Of a stretch of DNA of 64,000 nucleotides, positions 16,600 through 39,100 are shown one piece after another. The position numbers and the translations under genes were made by a program. The stretch comes from Asterias rubens (Eukaryota), in NCBI RefSeq assembly GCF_902459465.1, contig NC_047071.1:4464001-4528000 (forward strand), read 5' to 3'. The notes beneath the pieces are model-generated. The model was not told where the DNA came from and made no database searches. It worked only from the letters and a program-made list of their open reading frames with translations. Within the stretch, counting starts at the first letter, position 1. Each line of letters opens with the position of its first letter.

Positions 16600-16878
16600 T
16601 AGTCTTGGTACAAGACGCTCAATGCTGAGTTGGTTAACAACCTCTATGGTAATATCGTATAGGCCCCATACACTCAACGCTACACACAGCTTGACTATTC
16701 CACCGATAGAGGGCGATTCTGTAAGCCGCACTCGCGCCAGTTGAGTGTTGTGTGATGATCTAGAAGTTTTCCAACAGCGTCCGCTGACATTCAATAGTAA
16801 TGTGCATGGCGAGGAGAAAGGGAACATTTATCGCGATAGATGACTGATAGTGAATAACAACATCTTGCACAAAGACTA
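16600..16878. mobile_element. Non-autonomous element with a 9-bp TSD (Mutator/MULE-like); mirror ~37074-37350
   Basis: gggttgagc|tagtcttggtaca ... tgcacaaagacta|gggttgagc (TSD at 16591-16599 and 16879-16887, imperfect 13-bp TIR). Confidence 0.65.
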
Positions 16879-18555
16879 GGGTTGAGCTAGATCCAGCACT
16901 ATGGTTCTAGTCCGCGAGGAAGAAACAAAGTATTTTTCTTTAAATTATGATTTAGCCTTGAGAAAGATTCTGCTAGGTAAAAAAAAAAAATTTTGTTTGC
17001 ATTTATACCATAGGTCCTTTTTGACAGCAAGCAGTTTGCAACAGCTAATACTTTTTTCAAATGATAAAACAGGTAGAGTCTTAAATCACTGATTCTGCCT
17101 ATAGTAGCTTGTGCTGCAGCCAATAACTAGAGGGAACACAAGCTCAATTTAAATAGAGTACAACGAGGATGTCAAAGTTTCCTGAGCTTGATGTTTTACA
17201 AACGCTCAAAAACAAATCACACAGCAGTTCAAAGCTGTCTGTAGATTATGAGAAAAACATGTGACATTCTGGTGATTTTGCACAGTATCAAAACGATCAT
17301 TACTAAAGCTGCAGTTCTCCATCTAAGAAATGATACTTCATAAAATTGCATTAGTAGAGGGCATATTGATTTCATGAAAAAAATATTTCAGACTTCATTG
17401 AAATAAAATGAACAATCCATACGGGAAAATTCTATAAAGGAGACCAGTGACCCCTAAACTGTTAAATAGATAATATTTATTTTAAGAACATTTTTGGCAA
17501 TCCAAGCAAGGCACCGTGAAACCGCAGTTCGGCTTTAATTGGATGTTGGCTTTAAATTGTCCAGCACCTGGAATTGAAACTAACGCCCTGAAAGAAAAGA
17601 ACCATGTAGCTGTCAAGCAAGGGGATAAGTTTCCAGTGTGAGTTTCAGAACTTATGCTCCACAGGGAAAGGCAGGTTCGCCTGAAATTATTCCACTAATT
17701 TGGTTGCCATGGCATTGCCTACATGGAATTGAATATGTTTTGTGGATAGTAACTGTCTAAATAAAAAACTTTTGTGCAAGGTTCAAGTGAAGAATAACAA
17801 CTTTTTTTTGAAATGTTAGTTTGGTTTTGAAAGAAATGTGTAGAAATTTCCGCTTCTTTTAAAGGAAATAATTATCATGAACTTTCCCATATTATCAAAA
17901 CAAGTGATTGATGACTGATGTACCTTTTTGTTTTGTGTTTATATAACTGTACATTATGTTTTCTCAAAATACTACAAACTAAAAAGCGAAACCTACCACT
18001 GGTTTTGCTTCTATCCAAAGTGAACTTGATTTCTTTAATAAGACTGAATCATTGGAACTACATTTTCATCTGTGACTTCTGTTTTATATGACTGTTCCCA
18101 TTCCCGTAACCTTAATCCCCAACCCCTTGATCCCCACCAGTCCTAAACTGGGCTGCAAGTAATTGCCTTCTTACACTTGTTTGTATATTTATAGCTGTTA
18201 GTAATTGCCCTAGCTCTTTAACCTAGCTTTCTATGGGCTCTAAGCATTGGAGAGTGCAAGTCCCCTTTCCTTCTGATTAAGGCACACTCCCTTACCAAAC
18301 CAACCCCCGGGGATGTACCCCTTGGGTCTCAGGTAGTTGCCCTTTTAGTGTAACTCTTGTTTCCTTGTTTAGACTTTAGATTCTTTGGCTCCACACATAA
18401 GAAGTGCTGGATTAGCGGCCATTAGTCAGCCCTATCACCTGTGGGGCGGAGACACGGAACCTGACATCACTCCAACCTAAAGGTTAAGGTCACAGTGAGA
18501 AAAACAAACAGGGGGGCAACCTACTCAGTTTCTTTATGACGTCAGTAGTCATACT

Positions 18556-18929
18556 TTAAAGGCAGTGGACACTATTGGTAATTACTCAAAATAATTATTG
18601 GCATAAAACCTTTCTTCGTGACGAGTAATGGGGAGAGGTAGATGGTATAAAACTTTGTGGGAAACAGCTCCCTCTGAAGTGACGTAGTTTTCGAGAAAGA
18701 AGTAATTTTCCACAAATTTGATTTCGAGACCTCAGGTTTAGAACTTGAGGTCTCGAAATCAACCATCTAAACGCACACAACTTCGTGTGACAATGGTTAT
18801 TTTTCTTTTATTATTATCTCGCAACTTCGATGACCGATTGAGCTCAAATTTTCGTAGGTTTGTTATTTTATGCATATGATCAGAAAATAACAGTCTTTGA
18901 CAATTACCAATAGTGTCCACTGTCTTTAA
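18556..18929. mobile_element. Family A MITE, full length; mirror 35025-35398
   Basis: TTAA-aggcagtggacactattggtaatt ... aattaccaatagtgtccactgtct-TTAA. Confidence 0.92.
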
Positions 18930-20171
18930 AACATGGGTGAAAAGAAGACAGATGTCCCTACGTGTAGGTTTGGGCCTCTTCACAGAAGAAGCAGCAGTTC
19001 ATCACATAACAAGGGCTGGAAAATCACGAAGGTCATGGCCTCTGATGCCCTGGTCTTGGCCTTTGTGCCCCTTCAAAAGTTTCCCATAGACTTAAAGATT
19101 TTCCAATGGAACTGCCAATGCAAAATGATGAAATTCCAGGCCTGCATGACTTATAACTGTTTTTCTAAACTGAATATACAAAGCTTTCTTGACAGTAGAC
19201 TGGTGAACAAGTCATTAAATGTTTGTCGATGATATAGCGTTCCGACTCTGCGAGACTGCTAGCCCCTGCGAGACATCGGTTTTATATAATTAAGAGTAAC
19301 AGTCGTGACTCGGGAGCTCGTTGCCTCGCGCAGAGCAGCAATGATCTCGCACGAGCATTCTTTAAATCCAGAGAGCTACTTAGTGTATTACACTTTCCCG
19401 ATATTAACGACTTTTCCAAAGGTCTATCTTGGTAGCAGAGTCACCAAAAACAAAACATTAACAATTATTTTCCGTACATGCTTTCAAACAAAGATATGGA
19501 CCAGGAATGTAAGAGCCCATTTCATAAATGCTTGCATTTCCCATCAGATTGTCAGAGATGCCTGTAAGATGTTACAAGATTTCACACATTGCTTGTAAAG
19601 CTACTCCTCCTATATCAAGAACCTCCTCAAATATTCCAATCTAATTTGTCACTTTTGCTAGGGGAGGCTACAGATCTAAATGTGTTTGAGTGACGAGTTT
19701 TTGTTTTGATAACTTAACTTCTTATTTTTAGCGTCTAGATTACTGCAGGGGTTGACTGTGACTCACGTCATGGCCACCCTATCATCTTTAGACTGGTCAG
19801 TTTTGTGTTTGTAGGCGGGAGTAAATGGTTGAAGCACTTAATAACTCATCAATCAATGGGTGGATCTACCTCGGGGTACCTTAGGGAAATGGCAAAACCA
19901 TTTAGTCTAATTTTAAGTCATAAACCACAAGGGTCTAAATTTAATAACATGTACAGAGATGAAAAAACAGGCCTAGGTACTTTGCTTTTTAGTCAAAGTG
20001 AAGTTGTGATGTTAAATTCAATAATAAATGAGCAATTTAAAAATGGCTGCTATTTACTGAAGAAATTTTAATTGCTTGGAGCAAAGAGCGTTTAGTGCTA
20101 ACCAGGAAACAAGTAGAGCATAACCCGTTTACAAACAGCGCACAACCTGAACACACAAGTTATTGTAACAC

Positions 20172-20468
20172 CATAGAGTTATATATAAGAATTAGAGGGC
20201 GCACTGGTGATGCTTCTTGCACAAACGCAACGGGACCGCAAGGAGACACGCGCGCTCCATTCTGTCTGCGCGTTGAATATGAATTACACGTTGGAGTTTG
20301 TGTTTATTGACCGCTACGCGACGCTGTTTTTTTTTTCAACTTACAAAATGGCCGCACAAACACCACTAAGCAATGCCTGTTTTGTCAACTTAGAAAATGG
20401 CCGCCTACGCGCATGCCGGGTCGCGTATATAGGCCAGTGCGCCCTCTAGTTCTTATATATAACTCTAT
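20172..20468. mobile_element. MITE with 35-bp TIRs (catagag termini); mirror ~33486-33782
   Basis: atagagttatatataagaattagagggcgcactgg matches the reverse complement of 20434-20468 at 34/35 positions. Possible 4-bp TSD acac. Confidence 0.85.
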
Positions 20469-22543
20469 ACACTCTAAGTATTATAGCTTTGTGCTTTTCA
20501 TTAAATTTAAGTAATGTTTGCCTTACAAACATGATATTGTTAATACTATTTTCTTATTATTCTGGTGCAAACTATTCTAGCAGCGAACACTTTGCTTGAG
20601 TTTTATCATCCATCTTAGAGAACAAGTAGCTTCATTTTCCTTGAGTTTTTGTTCTTTGTATTGTTGTTATTATTATTTACTCATATTGAGCTGTTTTGTC
20701 CAATAAAATATGAAGAAGAAAAATACTGCCTAAAGCCACCCTTGTGCAAACAAGACATCACTCTCATGACAAACCAGAGTTTTTTCATTTTACAATGCAC
20801 ATGGCTAAAGTGAGTAAGCATCGATTCCATGCCTCTACCCACTCGTTATCCAAAACCTCAATTTATTATATCGGTAAATACACACGCAGAAAACCATCCA
20901 ACATTAGTTTACAAAATCTACCCCAGATAATAACCACACATGCATATGATATGCGCATTTATTTAAGGTAGCTGATGTTCCATACATGCTCGCACTCTCT
21001 GCGCCGACAAGCAGCCACACTCGTCCATGATTATCCCGCGCTGCAGATGTCAATATGCTAACATTCAAAATTGGACAGGCCGCGGCAATGTCTATGTATA
21101 TGCATATATTTTAGGCTTCTACACACGGGTAGTGTGTAGCATGGCATAAGTGACAATCAATAATAATTGACTGGGTAACTCACTCATGCAGAGACACAGA
21201 ATAGAGGGAAACGAGATCGGGCGGGAGGGACAGAGATAGCGGGGGAGAGGGGAGAGTGTGTCGACGAGGTGGGGGGGGGGTACAAACAAGACAAGACAGA
21301 GGGAGAGAGAAAAGGGGAAAAAGGTAGCCTGGCTTGCTTGGAATCACTCGCTAGGGGTTAATGCAAACATCGTCGGCGGTAATACCGATTGTTGACGACC
21401 CTCCAAATAGACAATTTATTTTCATTTTGGGATTTCACTGCAGTGAGTGTAAAGTGCACTCTCTCAATTATATTGTATGCCTTTTTCCAGGGGAAGTAAA
21501 TTTAATTAATATACACGTTGACATTTATGTATGTTGTTACGGAAAGTGCTGAGAAATGTGTGTGCATTATTCACACCTTGAGTGAAGATAGTTCGTACAT
21601 AATGTTTGCAAAGATTCCAGTTAAGGGTTCTTGTGCATTGACAGATTTTGCTTCGATTGTTTGTGTCGAATTCATGAGCAGTGGCGTTGCTAAGTAAATT
21701 AGTAGAAACCCATTTTAGGAAAAACAAAGAGAAGCTCTGAGGCACAAAGTTACAAGAGAAAAAAAAAACAAAAAAAAACTCCCCGTCATTAATCCAGATA
21801 ATTTATAGCCCTGAAAAGTGTAGTGTGAATGCTCCATCATTATCCTTGTATCATGTGTTTCTCATTCTAAACTGAACAAACATCATAACTTGAAGAAATT
21901 AGCTAATCAAAATTGTCCACATGGAAGCAGTTAATCATATTTACCTGTAAGGTGAAGAGTTTCCATACACTATAATTTACTCTTTTAAAAAAAAAAGAAA
22001 TCTTCACATTAACTCACCGCTCCTAAATCATGTAACTATTAGCAAATAACAGACATTACCTCCCCAAACAAAGTGTCAATTAATGATTACAAGCCAGCCC
22101 TTTCCTGTCAGGAAACAACAGTGTCATAAAATGCATCATTCCTGCGAGAATTCAGTGTCTGCTTTGTAACAAAGTTAAGAGAGAGATTAGGGAGTAAAGA
22201 TCCTGACAGGAGAAACCCAACTTTCCCCATCAGTGAATGTATAGATGCTTCATCATATCCTGTTATTTCACTGTGCACAAGGGGATCAATAGGCAGCTGT
22301 GAATTAAAGGTCAGTTGCAGCTGGGCGTAAACTGGGTTAATGCTGGGTAAACTGTAAGGTAACTGTTGGGTGGAGATTGGGTGATCATGGGTACCGGTAT
22401 GTCATACCCAGATAGCACAAAGATTGATGTACAGTAGAGGAAGGTTGGGAATTATAAAAAGTAGACAAACATAAGGGAATATTCATTACAATTTGAGAAA
22501 AGAAAACAATTAGGTGCATTTTTGAAAATTATCGCATATACAG

Positions 22544-22695
22544 GATGCGTTCGTTTAGCTTCCCTGGGTCGACCCCGGTGTGTGGTTGTTTTTTTTTTTC
22601 CCAGGATGAACGTGGGCCATATCTGCACACGTTCGTCCTGGAAAAAGAAAACGCCACACACCGAGGTCGTCCCGGGGAAGCTAAACGAACGCACC
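22544..22695. mobile_element. Fold-back MITE (~150 bp, almost entirely self-complementary); mirror ~31267-31422
   Basis: tgcgttcgtttagcttccc...ccggtgtgtgg pairs with ccacacaccg...gggaagctaaacgaacgca. Inner arms ccaggatgaacgtg / cacgttcgtcctgg. Confidence 0.85.
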
Positions 22696-23394
22696 CACTG
22701 GTAAAGGAGGGCAAAAGTGGGAATAGGCAGCCAAATACTTGGTACAAACTCTTGGTACAACTAGGGTAAATTAGTGTACTCATAGGTGAATATATCGCAC
22801 AAGTTAATAACAGCAATGAACCCTTCAAAGTAAAAGCATATTTAATTTAAAATTTATCCTCCGGACTGTACCCTTAAAGCATAGGTTTTAAAGAAGATTT
22901 GTTGTCCGTATTCTGTCTATCTAGTTTTGTCTTGGTAATAATCAAAGAATAAAGCATCTGTTGCAAGAAATGGGCCTTTATTTGGCCAACAATGGGATTT
23001 GTAAACAAGCTAGTTAACATTGATTGATCAATTGGGTGATAAATATCAAAGCTGTGTAATTCAAGTTATGTAAAATACAGAATGAGCGATTAACACTCAC
23101 AGGGGAATAAACCTGACAAACTAAATATCCCCTAAAACAACTTTCATGTTGACCCTCAGCTGGCCATAAAACAAGGTTGCATCAATCACTGCCAACTTGG
23201 TCTTCATTAACGAAACAAAAACTCCACATGAAAAAACAAACTTAAGAAAGTGAAAACAACACCAACTTCATCCCAAAAAGATGTTAGACGCTGAAACAGT
23301 CAGTAATTATCTACAAGTTTTGTTGTTTTGACACGACTGTCAGTAAAGTCCTTATGGTACATGTTGTTTGTCTTGTTTGTCCAACAACACACCT

Positions 23395-23597
23395 TTAAAG
23401 GGAAACACGTCACAAAAAAATATTTTAGCATGTAAAACGTATTTTTGTGATGCACTCATTTCTCAACAACTACAGCACCTCAGCAAGTAATATTTTCAGG
23501 GAAGCTTTCTACTATCATTATCTTCAAACTGTGTACGTTTAATGTAAATCTGTGGACATTGTGTTTTGTGTCCTACAAAAGTACCCAGACCCTTTAA
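23395..23597. mobile_element. Family C MITE, deleted derivative, TTAA-flanked; mirror ~30374-30573
   Basis: actacagcacctcagca(a/c)gtaatattttcagggaagctttctactatcattatcttcaaactgtg is shared with 45667-45730. It ends gtacccagaccct-TTAA. Confidence 0.8.
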
Positions 23598-24084
23598 GCA
23601 TCGCTATGAAATTGGGCCCTGCAACGGGTAGGAGCTGTTTAAATGTCAAGGAGGGACATACAAACTCAAGAAGCAGTTATTCTATTGATCTCTCTGGTGG
23701 ATGCAAACCACCGTCTGCAAGAAACACGGCCCGTCGTCCGCTGCCGTCCCAGCTATAAAGAAATGACACAAGAGCCTAAAGCCGTTACCTTACCGATGTA
23801 CTGGACTTCCATACGTAATGAAATGATACCTCTCAATGCAATTTGAAGCCCACACTCAAATTGGATGTTAAGAAATAGCTGTTGGAAAATTTCCTTTTTC
23901 GAAGATCTTTTGAAAGTAGGATGAAATTGTGACTCTATGGATCTAATGTAAGATCTGAGAGCTATGAAAACAACTTCAAATGTTCTGAGAAGACACTGCC
24001 TCATAAAAGACCTTTACATATTTCTCGCTAATAAACATCTCACTGATCACTGTGACTTTTGTATCTTTTTCATTTTGTTCCATT

Positions 24085-24750
24085 ATTTTTTAAAGGGAAG
24101 GTTACCACAAAAAAGGCTAAAAGCCACTTTTGGGATAAGGGGATATAAGAAGAACACATTCAAGATGAACAAAACTCAGGGGAGCTGAAGGTAGGAACTG
24201 ATACTCCTCTTAAAACAGTCTAGATTGTAGGATGAAGGGAAACATGCACCGGGCAAGGAGTTCCGAAGAGAGAAACTCAGGAGAGTTGAAGGCAGGAACT
24301 GATATTCCTCTTAAAACAGTTCAGATTTTAGGTAGGAGGGAAACATGCACCAGGCAAGGAGTTCCAAAGAGATGCAGTTGTGTTAAAGCTGTTGGAATGG
24401 CTCTTTGGTCATCATCTCAGAAACATGATGAGTGTATGGGTGAGAAAAAGCAGGAAAAAAAGACTGGTTTCACGTTCCAACATCCTAATAGGAGGAATCA
24501 GGTTCATACACTTGAGGCACATTACCACGAACACGTCTGTAGAAAAAGACAGAGGCTGGCTACAGACCTATACGATGGGAAAGAGGTTGTAGCGTATATC
24601 CCAACCCTTTCACCAACAAGATTAACAAAACGCTTCTGCACTCTATCTAATAAAGATAAATGACAGGCTGAGACCCAAATGTGACAACAGTACTCCATTA
24701 GGGGATATGCAGTTGTCTTTATACAGGTGAATCTATACACCAAGATCATT
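24085..24750 (-). mobile_element. 5'-truncated CR1/L2-type LINE (RT-downstream C-terminal region and 3' end); mirror ~29220-29885 on +
   Basis: Translation PLMEYCCHIW..LSLLDRVQKRFVNLVGE..SVASLCLF..LWNSLPGACFP..YNLDCFKR, the LYK/EY..W/QKR/LWNSLP motif series of CR1/L2/Jockey-group ORF2 C-termini. Frameshifted. Confidence 0.85.
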
Positions 24751-25211
24751 TTAATCAATGCATAATAATAAAAACAGGAAACCTACAAAGATAATGTTTT
24801 CATTTCCGATGTCGTGCCGTGTTTCTCTCTGCGCCTTTTTTTTATTGGATGTCTCCATAGATTGCATTATCGAGTTTTCAATCAACTTCATTATTTATTT
24901 AGGTTAATATTGATCTTGGAATTATTTGAGGCGGGGGAAAAACACACAGTGAAGGACAATGACAAAGCAATTTATAATGCAAGAATAAACAAGCACTAAG
25001 CCGAGCTGAACAGTGTGATCCTAGACAGCTGAATACAAATGTGACAATGACATGAAATAAACAAAATGTATTTACAAAGAAAATGGCGGGTAATAGCCTG
25101 TAATGGAAATGCTGGGGAAGTTACTGGACTGTCTGTATTGTTTACTCTCTTTGAATCAAGATAAGGTACAACATCAATAATATTAAGTACAATAAAGTCT
25201 GATCATCTTTT

Positions 25212-25245
25212 CCTGGAGACGGTCAGAGCATACTGATTGAAATAA
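25212..25245 (+). repeat. Second, more decayed copy of the hammerhead-like repeat; mirror ~28722-28752
   Basis: cctggagacggtcagagcatactgattgaaat versus cctgaagacgatcagagcatactgattgaaac at 10294. Confidence 0.6.
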
Positions 25246-25286
25246 TGATTGTCAATAACTGGTTGGTTTAGAACCACCACAACCCA

Positions 25287-25590
25287 TTAAAGGCAGTGGA
25301 CACTATTGGTAACTGTCAACTGCCTTCACAGTTGGTGTATCTCAACATATGCATAAATAACAAACCTGTGGAAATTTGAGCTCAATCGGTCATCAAAGTT
25401 GCGAGATACAATGAAAGAAGAAAACACCCTTGTCACACGAAGTTGTGTGCGTTTAGATGGTTGATTTTGAGACCTCAAGTTCTAAATCTGAGGTCTCAAA
25501 TACAAATTTGTGGAAAAATTACTTCTTTCTCAAAAACTATGGCACTTCAGAGCGAGCCGTTTCTCACAATGTTTTATACCATCAACCTCT
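25287..25590. mobile_element. Family A MITE, right end missing; mirror ~28372-28678
   Basis: TTAA-aggcagtggacactattggtaa ... stops at catcaacctct. Confidence 0.9.
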
Positions 25591-26154
25591 CAAACCACAA
25601 GAAAAACTGACTGGGTAGAATTAAAATAATTTGTGATTGAACAAAAACAAATGACTAGAGTGATATGGACCAAGGAAGTCCGGTTTAAAACGACACTTGA
25701 TATTGCACAGGCATTGTTGCCAACAAAAGGTAATATTTTTGTAAACTGTTTAAAAAAACAAGGAATATTGTATACAAATTCCCTTTAAACCACAAAAAAC
25801 TTAAAACCCATCAGTCATGATGAAATCTACAAATGACAGATCTTCACACTATTTGAACCGAATCCACTATGCAAGGGTTTGTCAACAATTATCTTTTCAC
25901 TAGGTTGCAAACGGAAAAATAAAATAATATAACTTCCTGAAAATTCATTCCGGCGTGCTGTGATAAACGTGTGAAGAATCCTAAATGGATCAGCAGTAAT
26001 TGCCTAGCCATTTCCGCAGTGCATTGGAGACTTAGACATTGAGAATGCTGCAATGAATTTAGCTGTTAGCTAATTGTTTATCCCTTTCTCAATTCAAAAA
26101 CAGTGGATTCATTGACGCTAGACAAAGATAGCCAATCAGCACTTCCATCAGTTT

Positions 26155-26539
26155 ATAAAGGCAGTGGACACTTTTGGTAATTACTCAAAATAATTATTGG
26201 CATAAAACCTTTATTGGTGACGAGTAATGGGGAGAGGTTGATAGTATAAAACATTGTGAGAAACGGCTCCCTCTGAAGTGCCATAGTTTTCGAGAAAGAA
26301 GTAATTTTCCACGGATTTGATTTCAAGACCTCAGATTTAGAACTTGAGGTCTCGAAATCAACCATCTAAATGCACACGACTTCGTGTGACAAGGGTTATT
26401 TTCTTTCATTATTATCTCGCAACTTCGATGACCGATTGAGCTCAAATTTTCACAGGTTTGTTATTTTATGCATATGTTGAGATACACCAACTCTGAAGGC
26501 TAGTCTTTGACAATTACCAATAGTGTCCACTGCCTTTAA
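26155..26539. mobile_element. Family A MITE, full length; mirror ~27426-27811
   Basis: ATAA-aggcagtggacac ... gtgtccactgcct-TTAA. Confidence 0.9.
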
Positions 26540-26781
26540 CTAAATAATTCGTGATTAGCAATACTCCAGAGGTATAATCTGAAAAATTTGATATTTAAAT
26601 CGCCTGAAAAGTCTCTTAAAGCAAGGTCCTTTCTCCAAAGCGACAAATGCAGAAAATTAGAAAATGGAAATTGGGCGTCAGGCAGGCCAACAGAGGCAAC
26701 TGCCACCTAGCTTTGGTCATTGCCTTGGGGCCCCTTAAAGTGTTCCAGTAAAAAATAAATTGTTCTTATCCAGAGGTGCCC

Positions 26782-27187
26782 TTAAAGGCAGTGGACACTA
26801 CTGGTAATTGTCAAAGACTAGCCTTTACAGTTGGTGTATCTCAACATATGCCTAAAATAACAAACCTGTGAAAATTTAAGCTCAATCGGTCATCAAAGTT
26901 GGGAGATAATAATGAAAGAAAAAAACACCCTTGTCACACGAAGTTGTGTGCGTTTAGATGGTTGATTTCGAGACCTCAAGTTCTAAACTTGAGGTCTCGA
27001 AATCAACCATCTAAACGCACACAACTTCGTGTGACAAGGGTGTTTTCTTCTTTTCATTATTATCTCCCAACTTTGATGACCGATTGAGCTTAAATTTTCA
27101 CAGGTTTGTTATTTTAGGCATATGTTGAGATACACCAACTGTAAAGGCTAGTCTTTGACAATTACCAGTAGTGTCCACTGCCTTTAA
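26782..27187. mobile_element. Family A MITE converted to a head-to-head palindrome of its left half (palindrome axis)
   Basis: The left half is present twice, inverted about ttgatttcgagacctcaag-ttctaaa-cttgaggtctcgaaatcaa (26962-27006). The normal right half (attcgtggaaaattac...) is absent. Confidence 0.95.
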
Positions 27188-30100
27188 GGGCACCTCTGGA
27201 TAAGAACAATTTTTTTTTACTGGAACACTTTAAGGGGCCCCAAGGCAATGACCAAAAGCTAGGTGGCAGTTGCCTCTGTTGGCCTGCTGACGCCCAATTT
27301 CCATTTTCTAATTTTCTGCATTTGTCGCTTTGGAGAAAGGACCTTGCTTTAAGAGACTTTTCAGGCGATTTAAATATCAAATTTTTCAGATTTACCTCTG
27401 GAGTATGCTAATCACGAATTATTTAGTTAAAGGCAGTGGACACTATTGGTAATTGTCAAAGACTAGCCTTCAGAGTTGGTGTATCTCAACATATGCATAA
27501 AATAACAAACCTGTGAAAATTTGAGCTCAATCGGTCATCGAAGTTGCGAGATAATAATGAAAGAAAAATAACCCTTGTCACACGAAGTCGTGTGCATTTA
27601 GATGGTTGATTTCGAGACCTCAAGTTCTAAATCTGAGGTCTTGAAATCAAATCCGTGGAAAATTACTTCTTTCTCGAAAACTATGGCACTTCAGAGGGAG
27701 CCGTTTCTCACAATGTTTTATACTATCAACCTCTCCCCATTACTCGTCACCAATAAAGTTTTATGCCAATAATTATTTTGAGTAATTACCAAAAGTGTCC
27801 ACTGCCTTTATAAACTGATGGAAGTGCTGATTGGCTATCTTTGTCTAGCGTCAATGAATCCACTGTTTTTGAATGAGAAAGGGATAACAATTAGCTAAAC
27901 AGCTAAATTCATTGCAGCCATTCTCAATGTCTAAGTCTCCAATGCACTGCGGAAATGGCTAGGCAATTACTGCTGATCCATTTAGGATTCTTCACACGTT
28001 TATCACGCACGCCGGAATGAATTTTCAGGACGTTATATTATTTTATTTTTCCGTTTGCAACCTAGTGAAAAGATAATTGTTGACAAACCCTTGCATATTG
28101 GATTCGGTTCAAATAGTGTGAAGATCTGTCATTGTAGATTTCATCATGACTGATGGGTTTAAGTTTTTGTGGGTTTAAAGGGAATTTGTATACAATATTC
28201 CTTGTTTTTTTAAAACAGTTTACAAAAATATTACCTTTTGTTGGCAACAATGCCTGTGCAATATCAAGTGTCGTTTTAAAAACCGGACTTCCTTGGTCCA
28301 TATCACTCTAGTCATTTGTTTTTGGTTCAATCACAAATTATTTTAATTCTACCCAGTCAGTTTTTCTTGTGGTTTGAGAGGTTGATGGTATAAAACATTG
28401 TGAGAAACGGCTCGCTCTGAAGTGCCATAGTTTTGAGAAAGAAGTAATTTTCCACAAATTTGTATTTGAGACCTCAGATTTAGAACTTGAGGTCTCAAAA
28501 TCAACCATCTAAACGCACACAACTTCGTGTGACAAGGGTGTTTTCTTCTTTCATTGTTATCTCGCAACTTTGATGACCGATTGAGCTCAAATTTCCACAG
28601 GTTTGTTATTTTATGCATATGTTGAGATACACCAACTGTGAAGGCAGTTGACAGTTACCATAGGTCACTGCCTTTAATGGGTTGTGGTGGTTCTAAACCA
28701 AACCAGTTATTGACAAATCATTATTTCAATCAGTATGCTCTGACCGTCTCCAGGAAAAGATGATCAGACTTTATTGTACTTAATATTATTGATGTTGTAC
28801 CTTATCTTGATTCAAAGAGAGTAAACAATACAGACAGTCCAGTAACTTCCCCAGCATTTCCATTACAGGCTATTACCCGCCATTTTCTTTGTAAATACAT
28901 TTTGTTTATTTCATGTCATTGTCACATTTGTATTCAGCTGTCTAGGATCACACTGTTCAGCTCGGCTTAGTGCTTGTTTATTCTTGCATTATAAATTGCT
29001 TTGTCATTGTCCTTCACTGTGTGTTTTTCCCCCGCCTCAAATAATTCCAAGATCAATATTAACCTAAATAAATAATGAAGTTGATTGAAAACTCGATAAT
29101 GCAATCTATGGAGACATCCAATAAAAAAAAAGGCGCAGAGAGAAACACGGCACGACATCGAAATGAAAACATTATCTTTGTAGGTTTTCCTGTTTTTATT
29201 ATTATGCATTGATTAAAATGATCTTGGTGTATAGATTCACCTGTATAAAGACAACTGCATATCCCCTAATGGAGTACTGTTGTCACATTTGGGTCTCAGC
29301 CTGTCATTTATCTTTATTAGATAGAGTGCAGAAGCGTTTTGTTAATCTTGTTGGTGAAAGGGTTGGGAGATACGCTACAACCTCTTTTCCCATCGTATAG
29401 GTCTGTAGCCAGCCCTGTCTTTTTTCTACAGACGTGTTCGTGGTAATGTGCCTCAAGTGTATGAACCTGATTCCTCCTATTAGGATGTTGGAACGTGAAA
29501 CCAGTCTTTTTTTCCTGCTTTTCTCACCCATACACTCATCATGTTTCTGAGATGATGACCAAAGAGCCATTCCAACAGCTTTAACCACAACTGCATCTCT
29601 TTGGAACTCCTTGCCTGGTGCATTGTTTCCCTCCTACCTAAATCTGAACTGTTTTAAGAGGAATATCAGTTCCTGCCTTCAACTCTCCTGAGTTTCTCTC
29701 TGTCGGAACTCCTTGCCCGGTGCATGTTTCCCTTCATCCTACAATCTAGACTGTTTTAAGAGGAGTATCAGTTCCTACCTTCAGCTCCCCTGAGTTTTGT
29801 TCATCTTGAATGTTGTCTTCTTATATCCCCTTATCCCAAAAGTGGCTTTTAGCCTTTTTTGTGGTAACCTTCCCTTTAAAAAATAATGGAACAAAATGAA
29901 AAAGATACAAAAGTCACAGTGATCAGTGAGATGTTTATTAGCGAGAAATATGTAAAGGTCTTTTATGAGGCAGTGTCTTCTCAGAACATTTGAAGTTGTT
30001 TTCATAGCTCTCAGATCTTACATTAGATCCATAGAGTCACAATTTTCATCCTACTTTCAAAAAGATCTTCGAAAAAGGAAATTTTCCAACAGCTATTTTC

Positions 30101-33100
30101 TTAACATCCAATTTGAGTGTGGGCTTCAAATTGCATTGAGAGGTATCATTTCATTACGTATGGAAGTCCAGTACATCGGTAAGGTAACGGCTTTAGGCTC
30201 TTGTGTCATTTCTTTATAGCTGGGACGGCAGCGGACGACGGGCCGTGTTTCTTGCAGACGGTGGTTTGCATCCACCAGAGAGATCAATAGAATAACTGCT
30301 TCTTGAGTTTGTATGTCCCTCCTTGACATTAAACAGCTCCTACCCGTTGCAGGGCCCAATTTCATAGCGATGCTTAAAGGGTCTGGGTACTTTTGTAGGA
30401 CACAAAAACACATGTCCACAGATTTACATTAAACTTACACAGTTTGAAGATAATGATAGTAGAAGCTTCCCTGAAAATATTACTTGCTGAGGTGCTGTAG
30501 TTGTTGAGAAATGAGTGCATCACAAAATACGTTTACATGCTAAAATATTTTTTTGTGACGTGTTTCCCTTTAAAGGTGTGTTGTTGGACAAACAAGACAA
30601 ACAACATGTACCATAAGGACTTTACTGACAGTCGTGTCAAAACAACAAAACTTGTAGATAATTACTGACTGTTTCAGCGTCTAACATCTTTTTGGGATGA
30701 AGTTGGTGTTGTTTTCACTTTCTTAAGTTTGTTTTTTCATGTGGAGTTTTTGTTTCGTTAATGAAGACCAAGTTGGCAGTGATTGATGCAACCTTGTTTT
30801 ATGGCCAGCTGAGGGTCAACATGAAAGTTGTTTTAGGGGATATTTAGTTTGTCAGGTTTATTCCCCTGTGAGTGTTAATCGCTCATTCTGTATTTTACAT
30901 AACTTGAATTACACAGCTTTGATATTATCACCCAATTGATCAATCAATGTTAACTAGCTTGTTTACAATCCCATTGTTGGCCAAATAAAGGCCCATTTCT
31001 TGCAACAGATGCTTTATTCTTTGATTATTACCAAGACAAAACTAGATAGACAGAATACGGACAACAAATCTTCTTTAAAACCTATGCTTTAAGGGTACAG
31101 TCCGGAGGATAAATTTTAAATTAAATATGCTTTTACTTTGAAGGGTTCATTGCTGTTATTAACTTGTGCGATATATTCACCTATGAGTACACTAATTACC
31201 CTAGTTGTACCAAGAGTTTGTACCAAGTATTTGGCTGCCTATTCCCACTTTTGCCCTCCTTACCAGTGGGTGCGTTCGTTAGCTTCCCCGGGACGACCTC
31301 GGTGTGTGGCGTTTTCTTTTTCCAGGACGAACGTGTGCAGATATGGCCCACGTTCATCCTGGGAAAAAAAAAAAACAACCACACACCGGGGTCGACCCAG
31401 GGAAGCTAAACGAACGCATCCTGTATATGCGATAATTTTCAAAAATGCACCTAATTGTTTTCTTTTCTCAAATTGTAATGAATATTCCCTTATGTTGTCT
31501 ACTTTTTATAATTCCCAACCTTCCTCTACTGTACAATCAATCTTTGTGCTATCTGGGTATGACATACCGTACCCATGATCACCCAATCTCCACCCAACAG
31601 TTACCTTACAGTTTACCCAGCATTAACCCAGTTTACGCCCAGCTGCAACTGACCTTTAATTCACAGCTGCCGATTGATCCCCTTGTGCACAGTGAAATAC
31701 AGGATATGATGAAGCATCTATACATTCACTGATGGGGAAAGTTGGGTTTCTCCTGTCAGGATCTTTACTCCCTAATCTCTCTCTTAACTTTGTTACAAAG
31801 CAGACACTGAATTCTCGCAGGAATGATGCATTTTATGACACTGTTGTTTCCTGACAGGAAAGGGCTGGCTTGTAATCATTAATTGACACTTTGTTTGGGG
31901 AGGTAATGTCTGTTATTTGCTAATAGTTACATGATTTAGGAGCGGTGAGTTAATGTGAAGATTCTTTTTTTTTTAAAAGAGTAAATTATAGTGTATGGAA
32001 ACTCTTCACCTTACAGGTAAATATGATTAACTGCTTCCATGTGGACAATTTTGATTAGCTAATTTCTTCAAGTTATGATGTTTGTTCAGTTTAGAATGAG
32101 AAACACATGATACAAGGATTAATGATGGAGCATTCACACTACACTTTTCAGGGCTATAAATTATCTGGATTAATGACGGGGAGTTTTTTTTGTTTTTTTT
32201 TTCTCTTGTAACTTTGTGCCTCAGAGCTTCTCTTTGTTTTTTCCTAAATGGGTTTCTACTAATTTACTTAGCAACGCCACTGCTCATGAATTCGACACAA
32301 ACAATCGAAGCAAAATCTGTCAATGCACAAGAACCCTAACTGGAATCTTTGCAAACATTATGTACGAACTATCTTCACTCAAGGTGTGAATAATGCACAC
32401 ACATTTCTCAGCACTTTCCGTAACAACATACATAAATGTCAACGTGTATATTAATTAAATTTACTTCCCTGGAAAAAAGGCATACAATATAATTGAGAGA
32501 GTGCACTTTACACTCACTGCAGTGAATCCAAAATGAAAATAAATTGTCTATTTGGAGGGTCGTGCAACAATCGGTATTACCGCCGACGATGTTTGCATTA
32601 ACCCTAGCGAGTGATTCCAAGCAAGCCAGGCTACCTTTTTCCCCTTTTCTCTCTCCCTCTGTCTTGTCTTGTTGTACCCCCCCCCCACCTCGTCGACACA
32701 CTCTCCCCTCTCCCCCGCTATCTCTGTCCCTCCCGCCCGATCTCGTTTCCCTCTATTCTGTGTCTCTGCATGAGTGGTTACCCAGTCAATTATTATGATT
32801 GTCACTTATGCCATGCTACACACTACCCGTGTGTAGAAGCCTAAAATATATGCATATACATAGACATTGCGCGGCCGGTCCAATTTTGAATGTTAGCATA
32901 TTGACATCTGCAGCGCGGGATAATCCATGGACGAGTGTGGCTGCTTGTCGGCGCAGAGAGTGCGAGCATGTATGGAACATCAGCTACCTTAAATAAATGC
33001 GCATATCATATGCATGTGTGGTTATTATCTGGGGTAGATTTTGTAAACTAATGTTGGATGGTTTCTGCGTGTGTATTTACCGATATAATAAATTGAGGTT

Positions 33101-36100
33101 TTTGGATAACGAGGGGTAGAGGCATGGAATCGATGCTTACTCACTTTAGCCATGTGCATTGTAAAATGAAAAAACTCTGGTTTGTCATGAGAGTGATGTC
33201 TTGTTTGCACAAGGGTGGCTTTAGGCAGTATTTTTCTTCTTCATATTTTATTGGACAAAACAGCTCAATATGAGTAAATAATAATAACAACAATACAAGA
33301 ACAAAAACTCAAGGAAAATGAAGCTACTTGGTCTCTAAGAGGGATGATAAAACTCAAGCAAAGTGTTCGCTGCTAGAATAGTTTGCACCAGAATAATAAG
33401 AAAAAGTATTAACCAATATCATGTTTGTAAGGCAAACATTACTTAAATTTAATGAAAAGCACAAAGCTATAATACTTAGAGTGTATAGAGTTATATATAA
33501 GAACTAGAGGGCGCACTGGCCTATATACGCGACCCGGCATGCGCGTAGGCGGCCATTTTCTAAGTTGACAAAACAGGCATTGCTTAGTGTGTTTGTGCGG
33601 CCATTTTGTAAGTTGAAAAAAAAAAACAGCGTCGCGTAGCGGTCAATAAACACAAACTCCAACGTGTAATTCATATTCAACGGCGCAGACAGAATGGAGC
33701 GCGCGTGTCTCCTTGCGGTCCCGTTGCGTTTGTGCAAGAAGCATCACCAGTGCGCCCTCTAATTCTTATATATAACTCTATGGGTGTTAACAATAACTTG
33801 TGTGTTTCAGGTTGTGCGCTGTTTGTAAACGGGTTTATGCTCTACTTGTTTCCTGGTTAGCACTAACGCTCTTTGCTCCAAGCAATTAAAATTTCTTCAG
33901 TAAATAGCAGCCATTTTAAATTGCTCATTTATTATTGAATTTAACATCACCAACTTCACTTGACTAAAAAGCAAAGTACCTAGGCCTGTTTTTTCATCTC
34001 TGTACATGTTATTAAATTTAGACCCTTGTGGTTTATGACTTAAAATTAGACTAAATGGTTTTGCCATTTCCCTAAGGTACCCCGAGGTAGATCCACCCAT
34101 TGATTGATGAGTTATTAAGTGCTTCAACCATTTACTCCCGCCTACAAACACAAACTGACCAGTCTAAGATGATAGGGTGGCCATGACGTGAGTCACAGTC
34201 AACCCCTGCAGTAATCTAGACGCTAAAAATAAGAAGTTAAGTTATCAAAACAAAAACTCGTCACTCAAACACATTTAGATCTGTAGCCTCCCCTAGCAAA
34301 AGGGACAAATTAGATTGGAATATTTGAGGAGGGTTCTTGATATAGGAGGAGTAGCTTTACAAGCAATGTGTGAAATCTTGTAACATCTTACAGGCATCTC
34401 TGACAATCTGATGGAAATGCAAGCATTTATGAAATGGGCTCTTACATTCCTGGTCCATATCTTTGTTTGAAAGCATGTACGGAAAATAATTGTTAATGTT
34501 TTGTTTTTGGTGACTCTGCTACCAAGATAGACCTTTGGAAAAGTCGTTAATATCGGGAAAGTGTAATACACTAAGTAGCTCTCTGGATTTAAAGAATGCT
34601 CGTGCGAGATCATTGCTGCTCTGCGCGAGGCAACGAGCTCCCGAGTCACGACTGTTACTCTTAATTATATAAAACCGATGTCTCGCAGGGGCTAGCAGTC
34701 TCGCAGAGTCGGAACGCTATATCATCGACAAACATTTAATGACTTGTTCACCAGTCTACTGTCAAGAAAGCTTTGTATATTCAGTTTAGAAAAACAGTTA
34801 TAAGTCATGCAGGCCTGGAATTTCATCATTTTGCATTGGCAGTTCCATTGGAAAATCTTTAAGTCTATGGGAAACTTTTGAAGGGGCACAAAGGCCAAGA
34901 CCAGGGCATCAGAGGCCATGACCTTCGTGATTTTCCAGCCCTTGTTATGTGATGAACTGCTGCTTCTTCTGTGAAGAGGCCCAAACCTACACGTAGGGAC
35001 ATCTGTCTTCTTTTCACCCATGTTTTAAAGACAGTGGACACTATTGGTAATTGTCAAAGACTGTTATTTTCTGATCATATGCATAAAATAACAAACCTAC
35101 GAAAATTTGAGCTCAATCGGTCATCGAAGTTGCGAGATAATAATAAAAGAAAAATAACCATTGTCACACGAAGTTGTGTGCGTTTAGATGGTTGATTTCG
35201 AGACCTCAAGTTCTAAACCTGAGGTCTCGAAATCAAATTTGTGGAAAATTACTTCTTTCTCGAAAACTACGTCACTTCAGAGGGAGCTGTTTCCCACAAA
35301 GTTTTATACCATCTACCTCTCCCCATTACTCGTCACGAAGAAAGGTTTTATGCCAATAAATTATTTGAGTAATTACCAATAGTGTCCACTGCCTTTAAAG
35401 TATGACTACTGACGTCATAAAGAAACTGAGTAGGTTGCCCCCCTGTTTGTTTTTCTCACTGTGACCTTAACCTTTAGGTTGGAGTGATGTCAGGTTCCGT
35501 GTCTCCGCCCCACAGGTGATAGGGCTGACTAATGGCCGCTAATCCAGCACTTCTTATGTGTGGAGCCAAAGAATCTAAAGTCTAAACAAGGAAACAAGAG
35601 TTACACTAAAAGGGCAACTACCTGAGACCCAAGGGGTACATCCCGGGGGTTGGTTTGGTAAGGGAGTGTGCCTTAATCAGAAGGAAAGGGGACTTGCACT
35701 CTCCAATGCTTAGAGCCCATAGAAAGCTAGGTTAAAGAGCTAGGGCAATTACTAACAGCTATAAATATACAAACAAGTGTAAGAAGGCAATTACTTGCAG
35801 CCCAGTTTAGGACTGGTGGGGATCAAGGGGTTGGGGATTAAGGTTACGGGAAATGGGAACAGTCATATAAAACAGAAGTCACAGATGAAAATGTAGTTCC
35901 AATGATTCAGTCTTATTAAAGAAAATCAAGTTCACTTTGGATAGAAGCAAAACCAGTGGTAGGTTTCGCTTTTTTAGTTTGTAGTATTTTGAGAAAACAT
36001 AATGTACAGTTATATAAACACAAACAAAAAGGTACATCAGTCATCAATCACTTGTTTTGATAATAGGGGAAAGTTCATGATAATTATTTCCTTTAAAAGA

Positions 36101-39100
36101 AGCGGAAATTTCTACACATTTCTTTCAAAACCAAAACTAACATTTCAAAAAAAAGTTGTTATTCTTCACTTGAACCTTGCACAAAAGTTTTTTATTTAGA
36201 CAGTTACTATCCACAAAACATATTCAATTCCATGTAGGCAATGCCATGGCAACCAAATTAGTGGAATAATTTCAGGCGAACCTGCCTTTCCCTGTGGAGC
36301 ATAAGTTCTGAAACTCACACTGGAACTTATCCCCTTGCTTGACAGCTACATGGTTCTTTTCTTTCAGGGCGTTAGTTTCAATTCCAGGTGCTGGACAATT
36401 TAAAGCCAACATCCAATTAAAGCCGAACTGCGGTTTCACGGTGCCTTGCTTGGATTGCCAAAAATGTTCTTAAAATAAATATTATCTATTTAACAGTTTA
36501 GGGGTCACTGGTCTCCTTTATAGAATTTTCCCGTATGGATTGTTCATTTTATTTCAATGAAGTCTGAAATATTTTTTTCATGAAATCAATATGCCCTCTA
36601 CTAATGCAATTTTATGAAGTATCATTTCTTAGATGGAGAACTGCAGCTTTAGTAATGATCGTTTTGATACTGTGCAAAATCACCAGAATGTCACATGTTT
36701 TTCTCATAATCTACAGACAGCTTTGAACTGCTGTGTGATTTGTTTTGAGCGTTTGTAAAACATCAAGCTCAGGAAACTTTGACATCCTCGTTGTACTCTA
36801 TTTAAATTGAGCTTGTGTTCCCTCTAGTTATTGGCTGCAGCACAAGCTACTATAGGCAGAATCAGTGATTAAGACTCTACCTGTTTATCATTTGAAAAAA
36901 GTATTAGCTGTTGCAAACTGCTTGCTGTCAAAAAGGACCTATGGTATAAATGCAAACAAAATTTTTTTTTTTTACCTAGCAGAATCTTTCTCAAGGCTAA
37001 ATCATAATTTAAAGAAAAATACTTTGTTTCTTCCTCGCGGACTAGAACCATAGTGCTGGATCTAGCTCAACCCTAGTCTTTGTGCAAGATGTTGTTATCA
37101 CTATCAGTCATCTATCGCGATAAATGTTCCCTTTCTCCTCGCCATGCACATTACTATTGAATGTCAGCGGACGCTGTTGGAAAACTTCTAGATCATCACA
37201 CAACACTCAACTGGCGCGAGTGCGGCTTACAGAATCGCCCTCTATCGGTGGAATAGTCAAGCTGTGTGTAGCGTTGAGTGTATGGGGCCTATACGATATT
37301 ACCATAGAGGTTGTTAACCAACTCAGCATTGAGCGTCTTGTACCAAGACTAGCTCAACCCTGACTATGGGGCGGTTCAAGTGCAGCCTGAGTTTGCCACT
37401 TGAATGCTATGTGCAGTATGCAAGAATATGACAAGAGTATAAGTGCCATGTCTATCAAACCATATGCATATGGTCAAAATTCCAGTTGAACCTAGTTAAC
37501 TGGGGTCAACTGGTTCAACTGGATAGTGATCAAACTCGTCCATTTTCCATATTAACCAACTGGTTTGGACTAAGTTTAACTGTGTTCAACTAGGTTGAAA
37601 TTATAAACCAGTTGGTCTCTGTCCATTTTCCATATTAAACCAACTGGTTTTAACTGTGTTTAAAGCCATTGGACCCTTTCGGTAAATAGTATTGTCCAAG
37701 GTCCACACTTCGTGTATCACAACTTCTATATCAAATAACAAACCTGTGAAAATTTAAGCTCAATCGGTCATTGGAGTCGGGAGAAAATAACGGGAAAATC
37801 CACCCTTGTATTCGCGCCTTTGGCCGTGTCATGAAATGTGTTTAAAATAAATCCGTAATTCTCGCTATCGAGAATTTATATTGTTTTACTGTTTTCTCAA
37901 AAAGTGAAGCATTTCATGGAATAATATTTCAAGAGAAGTCTTTCACCACTACCTTCTGTAAACCTTCTGTAAGTTATTTGTAAATCTGTGAACTGGTTTC
38001 AACTAGTTCCAGTTAAACCCAGTTTAACTAGGTTCAACTGGAATTTCGACCTGGGTGACCATGATTAAATATTTAGAATACTTATTGCCAGCCAACCTTA
38101 CTAGTTATTCTCACTGACGTGTTAGGGGGGGGGGGGGTGGCTGGAAGAGACATGAGATAATCCAGACTCCTGGTGGTTATGGAAGGTCAATTGTAACTTT
38201 GATTATAAGAAGGTTGGTTTTGAGTTCTTTTCTCTTTTGTTGAATCCAAACTTTCAGGAAGGAAGGAAGGCATGGGTCTTATTTCATAAAACCTGTAAGC
38301 ATTACTGCTAAGCACAGAAAAATAATGCTTTAATAACTTTATGAATTGGGACGCTGGTGAATACTTGATCATAGGAAGTTTATGGAAGTGAAGAAATTAC
38401 TGCATAATAATTTTACTTGTTGCTGATCTTTCTCTTCACCAGTATTGTATTTGCGTTGACTTTCGGGTTGAGTTCAAACTTACTAGGTCTTGTCTTCCAT
38501 TGACCCCACCCATCTGTTTGTTATTACTCGTTGAGTATACAGATATGATATGGTTTGAATGTATTCATATTTTTGTTGCAAATTATCATAATTCAGGGCC
38601 CAGATTGATCACCATGGATGATATATTGCAGTTGTCCTAGTTTTTCTTGTTGAGATAATACACTGATATTCTGTTCCATGTGTTTCAGACATGATATGTA
38701 TATTGGTTGAGTGGTGTAATCATATACAATGCATGCATCTAGCAGCTGGTCAAAGAGCATTGTTATTTCCATTCTTTTATGTTGCATAGGAAGGGAGGGT
38801 TCACACAAGGTGTGCAATGTTGTCCTTTCAGGAAGCAAGGTTGCTGTAAAGCATTCTTATTGCTGTGCTGCTGTGCTAACTTGTTTAATATGTCTGTCCG
38901 TTTGTGGTCGTTGTTTTGATTGTCATTTCCATTCTTTGATGTTGCATAGGAAAGGAGGGTTCATACTCAAGAGAGTTTCCTGTGACTGTGAGCATTCAGA
39001 GAAAACTCAACATCTCTGTAACATTTTACTAAAGCTGCATTTTGAATGCGTTCCGGTCCTACTATTTTGTTGTGCTTGTCATCGAAAAAGTCTCAACATG

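What the first reader, a model, noticed from the sequence alone, without database searches (positions are those of the whole stretch)
26962..27006. The palindrome axis is the native internal hairpin of a MITE: hairpin-primed fold-back
Seen: the axis ttgatttcgagacctcaag-ttctaaa-cttgaggtctcgaaatcaa is the same 19-bp-stem/7-nt-loop hairpin found in an ordinary family A copy at 51414-51458. Normal copies continue after the stem with attcgtggaaaattac. Here the sequence continues ccatctaaacgcac, which is a copy back along the left half. Established: a break or stall just past a short inverted repeat lets the 3' end snap back and prime synthesis, the mechanism of short-IR-primed palindrome formation (Tetrahymena rDNA, yeast, gene amplification) and of in vitro fold-back chimeras. 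Inference: this very abundant MITE family seeds the genome with ready-made fold-back primers. They could drive inverted duplications in vivo and systematic assembly artefacts.
Basis: partly seen in the sequence, partly recalled or inferred. Interest (0 to 1): 0.75.

Follow-up and report, generated by a model that had tools for sequence, protein, structure and literature searches.

The report
Contig-end fold-back at a MITE hairpin
A 31-kb mirror-image duplication in this sea-star assembly turns round exactly in the small natural hairpin of a common mobile element. It is most likely a folded-back DNA molecule built into the end of a contig, not a true part of the genome.

Summary
Positions 26962-27006 are the internal hairpin of an abundant ~389-bp TTAA-flanked MITE (really a 21-bp stem and 3-nt loop). 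At this site both sides of the hairpin are the MITE's right half; its left half is missing.

The hairpin is the exact centre of a much larger palindrome. The left arm is 11566-26982 and the right arm is 26986-42404. The left arm starts at the first base after a 500-N scaffold gap, and the right arm runs on into unique DNA.

The arms differ by 148 indels against only 41 substitutions; 141 indels are 1 nt and 127 lie in homopolymers. Wherever short-read contigs of the best-holding sample contradict the right arm at an arm difference, they match the left arm (8 of 8). So the arms are two noisy long-read readings of one sequence, not diverged copies.

Best reading (about 0.75): a hairpin-capped or snapped-back molecule gave a fold-back long read that was assembled as a dead-end contig extension. 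A real germline palindrome (about 0.12) is not excluded, because I could not examine depth outside the palindrome or raw long reads across the axis.

The hairpin's causal role is well supported: chance placement is about 0.1-0.6%. In-vivo relevance and systematic behaviour are untested; the ten other independent copies in the window are ordinary. The same scan noted a 214-bp hairpin-primed palindrome elsewhere in this genome.

The parts
26962..27006 (.). Axis hairpin: a 21-bp perfect stem and 3-nt loop (CTA, 26983-26985). It is the native internal inverted repeat of the MITE family.
   Evidence: The same stems occur in the ordinary copy at 51414-51458.
26782..27190 (.). Symmetric MITE derivative: right half (reverse-complemented), hairpin, right half. 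The left half is absent.
   Evidence: reference positions 163-387 match on both strands, at 26782-27006 (minus) and 26962-27187 (plus).
11566..26982 (-). Left arm of the palindrome, 15.4 kb. It is a dead-end mirror copy that starts at the first base after the N gap, and is probably artefactual.
   Evidence: one alignment of 15,505 columns at 98.6% identity; gap edge.
26986..42404 (+). Right arm of the palindrome. It continues without a break into unique DNA from 42405 and is probably the true locus, though poorly polished.
   Evidence: In one search table 8, short-read contigs differ from it mainly by gaps.
11066..11565 (.). A 500-N scaffold gap that bounds the left arm.
51252..51640 (+). Ordinary full-length MITE copy used as the reference: left half 1-162, hairpin 163-207 (window 51414-51458), right half 208-389. 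It has TTAA at both ends.
26156..26539 (+). Ordinary full MITE copy in the left arm. Its mirror image lies at 27427-27810 in the right arm.

Best explanation
The palindrome is most likely an assembly artefact seeded by a real structure. The true locus probably carries an ordinary MITE copy (left half, hairpin, right half) followed by the sequence now seen as the right arm. In one or a few DNA molecules the duplex ended in or just beyond the MITE's 21-bp inverted repeat. The exposed strand snapped back on that repeat. It was then either sealed into a hairpin-capped end or extended along itself. This could have happened in the test tube during damage repair, end repair or ligation, or in the cell as a hairpin-capped break. 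A long-read sequencer reads such a molecule down one strand, round the native loop and back up the other, giving a fold-back read with no adapter letters at the turn. Normal reads from either orientation also align right through the 45-nt hairpin. Read coverage therefore never drops at the junction, so a coverage-based chimera filter would not cut it. That point became the contig end, and a scaffolder later placed the N gap there. Reads then mapped equally well to both arms, so polishing failed and each arm kept its own single-base deletion errors. Shown: the geometry, the gap-bounded dead-end arm, the noise-type differences between arms, and short-read agreement with one arm or the other. Inferred: the library or assembly steps, the sequencing technology, and where the molecule folded back.
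For: (1) One alignment joins 11566-26982 to 26986-42404. It begins at the first base after the N run 11066-11565, while the right arm continues into unique DNA. (2) The arm differences are 148 indels against 41 mismatches. Of the indels, 141 are 1 nt, 127 lie in homopolymer context, and they split evenly (75 missing in the right arm, 73 in the left). This is the profile of unpolished noisy long reads, not of evolutionary divergence. (3) Short-read contigs of the best-holding sample (X1 and X2) differ from the right arm mostly by gaps: 10 in 590 nt, 15 in 630 nt, 5 in 750 nt (table 8). (4) At all 8 listed places where they contradict the right arm and the arms differ, they carry the left arm's version: 28031, 28098, 29185, 29369, 29814, 29815, 31672, 31698. 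(5) Within the intervals laid, the right arm lacks a base about 23 times and the left arm about 17 times. So there is one underlying sequence, read twice with independent errors. (6) Sites 30219-31191, where the X1 and X2 contigs of one sample differ and which I read as heterozygous, carry the same allele in both arms. That fits both arms coming from one molecule or haplotype near the axis. (7) No foreign letters lie between the arms, only the native stem, loop and stem. A random axis would hit a MITE hairpin with probability of about 0.1-0.6%. (8) Raw reads of a related or the same species (organism B) cover the unique parts of the arm at about 2.4x, against about 4-4.6x expected for a single copy. 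This gives no sign of doubled copy number there (table 2). (9) Published work describes adapter-free fold-back reads in ONT and PacBio data. They arise in library preparation, recur at the same places and can tangle assembly graphs (PMC12338684). Ligation-based preparations give inverted-repeat chimeras (PMC13141652), and native inverted repeats drive library chimeras (PMC10908179).
Against: A real palindrome with arms longer than most reads would also make an assembler stop at the outer arm boundary. The gap-bounded arm is therefore expected under both readings. I laid reads only inside the palindrome (26500-32499), so I have no single-copy depth baseline from the source individual. The output at the axis was swamped by reads from thousands of other MITE copies, so I could not count reads that pass through the axis against reads that leave it into a left half. 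Contigs drop minor variants, so the '8 of 8' result does not prove that only one version exists in the genome. The outer 3 kb of the arms shows allele-like substitutions, 24 mismatches in 11566-14565. Explaining these needs an extra assumption, a haplotype switch in one arm. The sequencing platform is inferred from the error profile and from my memory of this species' public assembly, not from a tool result.
Confidence: 0.75

Rival explanations
1. The palindrome is a real germline inverted duplication of 15.4 kb or more. It would have been made in vivo by fold-back priming, by replication of a hairpin-capped break, or by a replication template switch at the MITE hairpin. It would be very young, so the arms are still identical apart from sequencing errors.
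For: The axis geometry is exactly what short-inverted-repeat fold-back produces in yeast, Tetrahymena and mammalian cells (PMC7999016). An assembler would also end a contig at the outer boundary of a real long palindrome.
Against: No divergence between the arms exceeds sequencing noise in the inner 12 kb. From established knowledge, not tested here: a perfect 31-kb palindrome with a 3-nt spacer should be highly unstable in a germ line. An interstitial version also needs a second junction that is not seen. Organism-B reads show no excess depth. The contig before the gap does not end in the missing MITE left half or in arm sequence.
Confidence: 0.12
2. It is an ordinary missed-adapter or template-plus-complement palindromic read whose turning point merely happens to lie in the MITE hairpin. 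The hairpin played no causal part.
For: Missed adapters and unsplit duplex reads are a common source of palindromic long reads (background in PMC12338684).
Against: No adapter or other foreign letters lie at the axis; the three central bases are the native loop. The chance that a random fragment end falls in a MITE hairpin is about 0.1-0.6%.
Confidence: 0.04
3. The symmetric element arose by ectopic recombination between the stem of one MITE copy and the complementary stem of another. That inversion would create right/right and left/left hybrid elements.
For: Such an exchange would give a right-half / hairpin / right-half element with an inverted loop (CTA), as observed.
Against: It predicts unrelated flanks on the two sides. 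Here the mirror symmetry continues for 15.4 kb beyond the element on both sides.
Confidence: 0.01

Closest known systems
Fold-back (palindromic) artefact reads in long-read sequencing and the contig errors they cause (Heinz, Meyerson and Li, PMC12338684; ligation-preparation inverted-repeat chimeras, PMC13141652)
   Same: [quoted passage not shown] No adapter sequence lies at the junction. The origin is in library preparation, and the reads can tangle an assembly graph.
   Different: Here the turn can be tied to a specific native 21-bp inverted repeat inside a transposable element. It is seen fixed in a published-type assembly as a 15.4-kb dead-end arm, not in individual reads.
Short-inverted-repeat fold-back priming and hairpin-capped double-strand breaks that lead to large palindromes (Tetrahymena rDNA, yeast minichromosomes with a 42-bp repeat, CHO cells; reviewed in PMC7999016)
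   Same: A pre-existing short inverted repeat next to a DNA end becomes the centre. The loop of the repeat becomes the spacer, and everything distal to the repeat is lost.
   Different: Those are demonstrated in-vivo events that yield replicated palindromic chromosomes. Nothing here shows that the product exists in germline DNA.
Library chimeras driven by native inverted repeats in short-read preparations (PDSM model, PMC10908179; strand-split artefact reads in FFPE DNA, PMC6344851)
   Same: Partly single-stranded fragments pair through native inverted repeats and are filled in, giving strand-switched chimeras.
   Different: Those artefacts span tens to hundreds of bases within short reads, not a 15-kb arm built into a contig.
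Foldback transposons and MITE dimers
   Same: The 409-bp core (26782-27190) looks like a symmetric element with long inverted arms.
   Different: The symmetry does not stop at the element ends; it continues for 15.4 kb. The unit has no target-site duplication of its own and no second copy in the window.

Membership tests
Contig-end fold-back assembly artefact | An inverted duplication with essentially no spacer, one arm of which is a dead end at a contig end or gap | tested here: met
   The arms are 11566-26982 and 26986-42404 with a 3-nt centre. The left arm starts at the first base after the N run 11066-11565.
Contig-end fold-back assembly artefact | Differences between the arms are sequencing noise, not divergence | tested here: met
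   There are 148 indels (141 of 1 nt, 127 in homopolymers) against 41 mismatches. Short-read contigs match one arm or the other at the difference sites.
Contig-end fold-back assembly artefact | Single-copy read depth over the duplicated segment in the assembled individual | tested here: inconclusive
   Reads were laid only inside the palindrome, so there is no baseline. Organism-B raw reads give about 2.4x in the unique parts against about 4-4.6x expected for one copy.
Contig-end fold-back assembly artefact | Only a few symmetric long reads support the turn, while normal reads leave the hairpin into other sequence | not testable with these tools
   No raw long reads of the source were available. 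The short-read output at the axis was swamped by other MITE copies.
Short-inverted-repeat-primed palindrome (fold-back priming or hairpin-capped end) | The centre coincides with a pre-existing short inverted repeat, and the loop of the repeat is the spacer | tested here: met
   The same 21-bp stems and 3-nt loop occur in 11 other copies of the MITE. The chance expectation is about 0.1-0.6%.
Short-inverted-repeat-primed palindrome (fold-back priming or hairpin-capped end) | Sequence distal to the repeat is lost from the product | tested here: met
   The MITE left half (reference positions 1-162) is absent on both sides of the axis.
Short-inverted-repeat-primed palindrome (fold-back priming or hairpin-capped end) | The product exists in cellular (germline) DNA, shown by independent libraries or individuals | tested here: inconclusive
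   could not resolve reads across the axis, and there is no independent assembly of the locus.
MITE | Short non-coding element with terminal inverted repeats, target-site duplication and many copies | tested here: met
   The element is about 389 bp with roughly 23-nt inverted ends. TTAA flanks both ends in 9 of 10 complete copies. There are 11 independent copies in the window. Read depth is about 23,000 at roughly 4-5x sampling, which implies thousands of close copies. No ORF or Pfam domain was found.
Foldback transposon | The symmetric unit is itself bounded by a target-site duplication and recurs as a unit | tested here: not met
   The symmetry runs 15.4 kb beyond the 409-bp core, and the window holds no second symmetric copy.

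The most novel reading that the evidence does not exclude
The 31-kb perfect palindrome is real in this sea star's germ line, or this MITE hairpin is a recurrent in-vivo site of hairpin-capped breaks. In that case a transposon family with thousands of copies would act as a genome-wide set of fold-back initiation sites, driving inverted duplications in a wild animal.
Probability: 0.1. Interest if true: 0.7.

Novelty: not a real feature. Interest (0 to 1): 0.25.

Why it matters
Practically, about 15.4 kb (11566-26982) of this assembly is probably a false inverted duplicate. Both arms are poorly polished, at roughly one indel per 100 bases, so anything annotated or mapped there is unreliable. Methodologically, it is a clean example of a native short inverted repeat making a fold-back chimera that carries no adapter. 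Normal reads align through the hairpin from both sides, so the junction shows no coverage drop and can escape the usual chimera filters. With one such MITE hairpin every few kilobases in this genome, a genome-wide tally of contig-end fold-backs against hairpin positions would be an easy and useful check. If the palindrome were real, it would be a rare natural case of transposon-seeded palindrome formation in an animal germ line.

Tried and rejected
(1) I laid reads on 26500-32499. The joint and loose-end tables were filled by reads from thousands of other MITE copies. I also failed to include unique DNA beyond 42404, so no depth baseline exists.

(2) Word depth of the X1 contigs is about 132-146 in the arm, with one contig at 73. 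This could mean diploid against haploid depth of a single-copy locus, or four against two copies. I rejected it as evidence because it has no baseline.

(3) I considered loop orientation (CTA against the family's TAG) as a way to tell which arm is native. A palindromic read can be laid either way, so it does not separate an artefact from a real palindrome.

(4) I looked for a gene within 10 kb of the axis in order to fetch the orthologous locus from another assembly. There are no ORFs with Pfam hits and no convincing exons, so I dropped this route.

(5) Eight look-ups of the scan's earlier notes for other gap-bounded or hairpin-centred giant palindromes in this genome found none in the rows shown. 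Only 8 rows are shown per look-up, so this is not evidence of absence.

(6) Inversion by recombination between the stems of two MITE copies was rejected because the flanks are mirror images for 15.4 kb.

(7) The truncated copy at 312-504, which ends at the hairpin, was rejected as the missing left half. It is only about 83% identical to the reference copy and lies 11 kb from the gap.

Full report
**What is there.** The stem can be extended by two more pairs, so the structure is a perfect 21-bp stem with a 3-nt loop, CTA, at 26983-26985. The same stems occur at 51414-51458 inside an ordinary copy of a repeat at 51252-51640. With that copy as reference (389 bp), BLAST finds 11 independent copies or fragments in the window, plus the mirror images inside the palindrome.

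The family has the marks of a MITE. Its ends are inverted repeats of about 23 nt, and TTAA flanks both ends in 9 of 10 complete copies. It has no coding capacity. The hairpin occupies reference positions 163-207, between a left half (1-162) and a right half (208-389). Every copy keeps the hairpin. The loop reads TAG in the left-to-right sense in all of them, and two copies carry paired C:G-to-T:A changes in the stem.

Read depth on an ordinary copy was about 23,000 in a sample of roughly 4-5x genome coverage. Thousands of close copies therefore exist, and "very abundant" is fair.

**The symmetric element.** At the axis, reference positions 163-387 match on both strands: 26782-27006 on the minus strand and 26962-27187 on the plus strand. 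The loop is CTA in front of the right-hand right half. That is the reverse complement of the family's usual orientation, so the loop is colinear with the left arm.

**The larger structure.** The hairpin is the centre of a 30.8-kb palindrome. A single alignment of 15,505 columns at 98.6% identity joins 11566-26982 to the reverse complement of 26986-42404. The window has one N run, 11066-11565, and the left arm begins at the very next base. The right arm continues past 42404 into unique sequence. The left arm is therefore a dead-end mirror copy at the start of a contig.

**The nature of the arm differences.** The arms differ by 41 mismatches and 148 indels. Of the indels, 141 are single bases and 127 lie next to the same base. 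They are split evenly, with 75 bases missing in the right arm and 73 in the left. This is the error profile of an unpolished noisy long-read consensus, not of sequence evolution.

The differences fall in three zones:
- Outer 3 kb (11566-14565): 24 mismatches and 34 indels.
- Middle 5 kb (14566-19565): 5 mismatches and 18 indels.
- Inner 7.4 kb (19566-26984): 12 mismatches and 96 indels.

My counts agree with that note and add a cleaner middle zone.

**Reads.** I laid two contig sets from the best-holding sample (X1 and X2, probably the assembled individual) and two raw Illumina runs of organism B on 26500-32499. Reads from other MITE copies swamped the joint and loose-end tables, so nothing can be said about reads crossing the axis.

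The unique parts were informative. Short-read contigs differ from the right arm mainly by gaps: 10 in 590 nt, 15 in 630 nt and 5 in 750 nt (table 8). The supposedly true arm is therefore also unpolished. At all 8 listed places where both the arms and the contigs disagree with the right arm, the contigs carry the left arm's version. These are 28031, 28098, 29185, 29369, 29814, 29815, 31672 and 31698. Within the intervals laid, the right arm lacks a base about 23 times and the left arm about 17 times.

At each difference, then, one arm is right and the other carries a deletion-type error. This is what two independent noisy readings of one sequence look like. Sites 30219-31191, where X1 and X2 contigs of one sample differ and which I read as heterozygous, carry the same allele in both arms. 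Near the axis, therefore, both arms represent one haplotype.

Organism-B raw reads cover the unique parts at about 2.4x, where about 4-4.6x would be expected for one copy (table 2). This gives no hint of a doubled copy number in that organism. It says nothing about a duplication private to the assembled individual.

**Is the hairpin causal?** No foreign letters lie at the turn; only the native stem, loop and stem are there. In 48 kb of non-redundant window there are 4 other perfect hairpins with stems of 10 or more and about 10 MITE hairpins. A randomly placed turn would fall on a MITE hairpin centre with a probability of about 0.1%. If any point in the distal stem or loop is counted, the figure is about 0.6%. 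The coincidence is not chance, and the hairpin mediated the fold-back. This rules out an ordinary missed-adapter read as the full explanation.

**Mechanism.** Fold-back at a short inverted repeat next to a DNA end is established. Resection exposes the repeat, the 3' end pairs within its own strand, and gap filling seals a hairpin-capped end. Cruciform cutting gives the same hairpin-capped ends, and replication of such an end yields a large palindrome (PMC7999016).

The same chemistry can occur in the tube, where repair and ligation mixes act on nicked or frayed fragments. Adapter-free fold-back reads are documented in ONT and PacBio data. They are attributed to library preparation, recur at the same places and are said to tangle assembly graphs (PMC12338684). 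Ligation-based preparations give 0.18-7.33% inverted-repeat chimeras (PMC13141652). Native inverted repeats drive chimeras in short-read libraries as well (PMC10908179).

My inference for this locus runs as follows:
- A hairpin-capped or snapped-back molecule gave a read that runs down one strand, round the native loop and back.
- Normal reads align through the 45-nt hairpin from both sides, so coverage does not drop at the junction and a filter would not cut it.
- The assembler extended the contig back on itself until the read ended.
- Later polishing failed because reads mapped equally well to both arms.

From memory, not from a tool result, the public assembly of this species was built from noisy PacBio reads with Hi-C scaffolding. 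That matches the error profile and the 500-N gap. Earlier notes of this scan call the genome the common starfish, Asterias rubens; I did not verify that.

**Why a real palindrome is not excluded.** An assembler would also stop at the outer boundary of a true palindrome whose arms exceed the read length. The gap-bounded arm is therefore expected under both readings. I have no depth baseline outside the palindrome and no raw long reads.

Several points argue against a real germline structure. The inner 12 kb shows no divergence beyond noise. Long perfect palindromes with tiny spacers are known to be unstable (established knowledge, not tested here). An interstitial version would need a second junction. 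The contig before the gap ends neither in the missing left half nor in arm sequence. I put the artefact at about 0.75, a real germline palindrome at about 0.12, and the remaining alternatives at about 0.05 together.

**The systematic claim.** None of the other 10 independent copies in the window is symmetric. One old, diverged copy at 312-504 is cut off exactly at the outer edge of the hairpin. This is suggestive but anecdotal. The look-ups of earlier notes on this genome showed no other kilobase-scale fold-back centred on this hairpin, though only eight notes are shown per look-up. They did show a 214-bp hairpin-primed palindrome that was judged real (s1-178723). The idea that this family seeds fold-backs remains a reasonable but untested hypothesis.

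**Verdict.** The geometric part of the interpretation, fold-back at the native MITE hairpin, is supported. The structure it created is most probably not part of the genome. It is a contig-end artefact of a known kind, so interest is low to moderate, mainly as a quality flag and a didactic example.

Noticed in passing
window 312-504: An old MITE copy, about 83% identical to the reference copy, consists only of the left half plus the hairpin. It is cut off at the outer edge of the hairpin (reference position about 205). This may be a deletion or truncation end-point at the same inverted repeat.
   Followed up: partly
window 44933-44977 and 25461-25505 (mirror at 28460-28504): Two MITE copies carry paired changes in the hairpin stem (C:G to T:A on both sides). 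All 11 copies keep the hairpin and the TAG loop orientation, so the hairpin looks like a maintained feature of the family and not a chance palindrome.
   Followed up: partly
ends of the copies at 8227-8617, 10405-10737, 18556-18930, 44752-45139, 46005-46391, 51252-51640, 53385-53779, 58541-58931: The family is flanked by TTAA on both sides, with ends AGGCAGTGGACAC and its complement. This suggests TTAA-targeting (piggyBac-like) insertion. No autonomous partner was sought.
   Followed up: no
window 26986-32499, and by symmetry 21470-26982: Both arms are poorly polished. Short-read contigs of the probable source sample differ from the right arm by roughly one gap per 50-150 bases. Any annotation or variant calling across 11566-42404 should be distrusted.
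   Followed up: partly
window 11566-14565 against 39405-42404: The outer 3 kb of the arms differ by 24 substitutions and by a 10-nt plus 2-nt indel near 11690 (42270-42285 in the right arm). These look allelic and suggest that the two arms represent different haplotypes there. The middle zone, 14566-19565, is much cleaner than either neighbour.
   Followed up: partly
window 27900-28299: Organism-B raw reads give almost zero depth here, while neighbouring unique bins have 2-8x. The segment may be absent from, or strongly diverged in, that organism.
   Followed up: no
window 56700-56751 and 45601-45636: Two further perfect palindromes that are not part of the MITE family. One has a 24-bp stem with a 4-nt loop; the other is an 18-bp stem with no loop.
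   Followed up: no
window 10405-10737: A MITE copy with an internal deletion of reference positions 44-99 lies 330 bp before the contig end at the gap.
   Followed up: no
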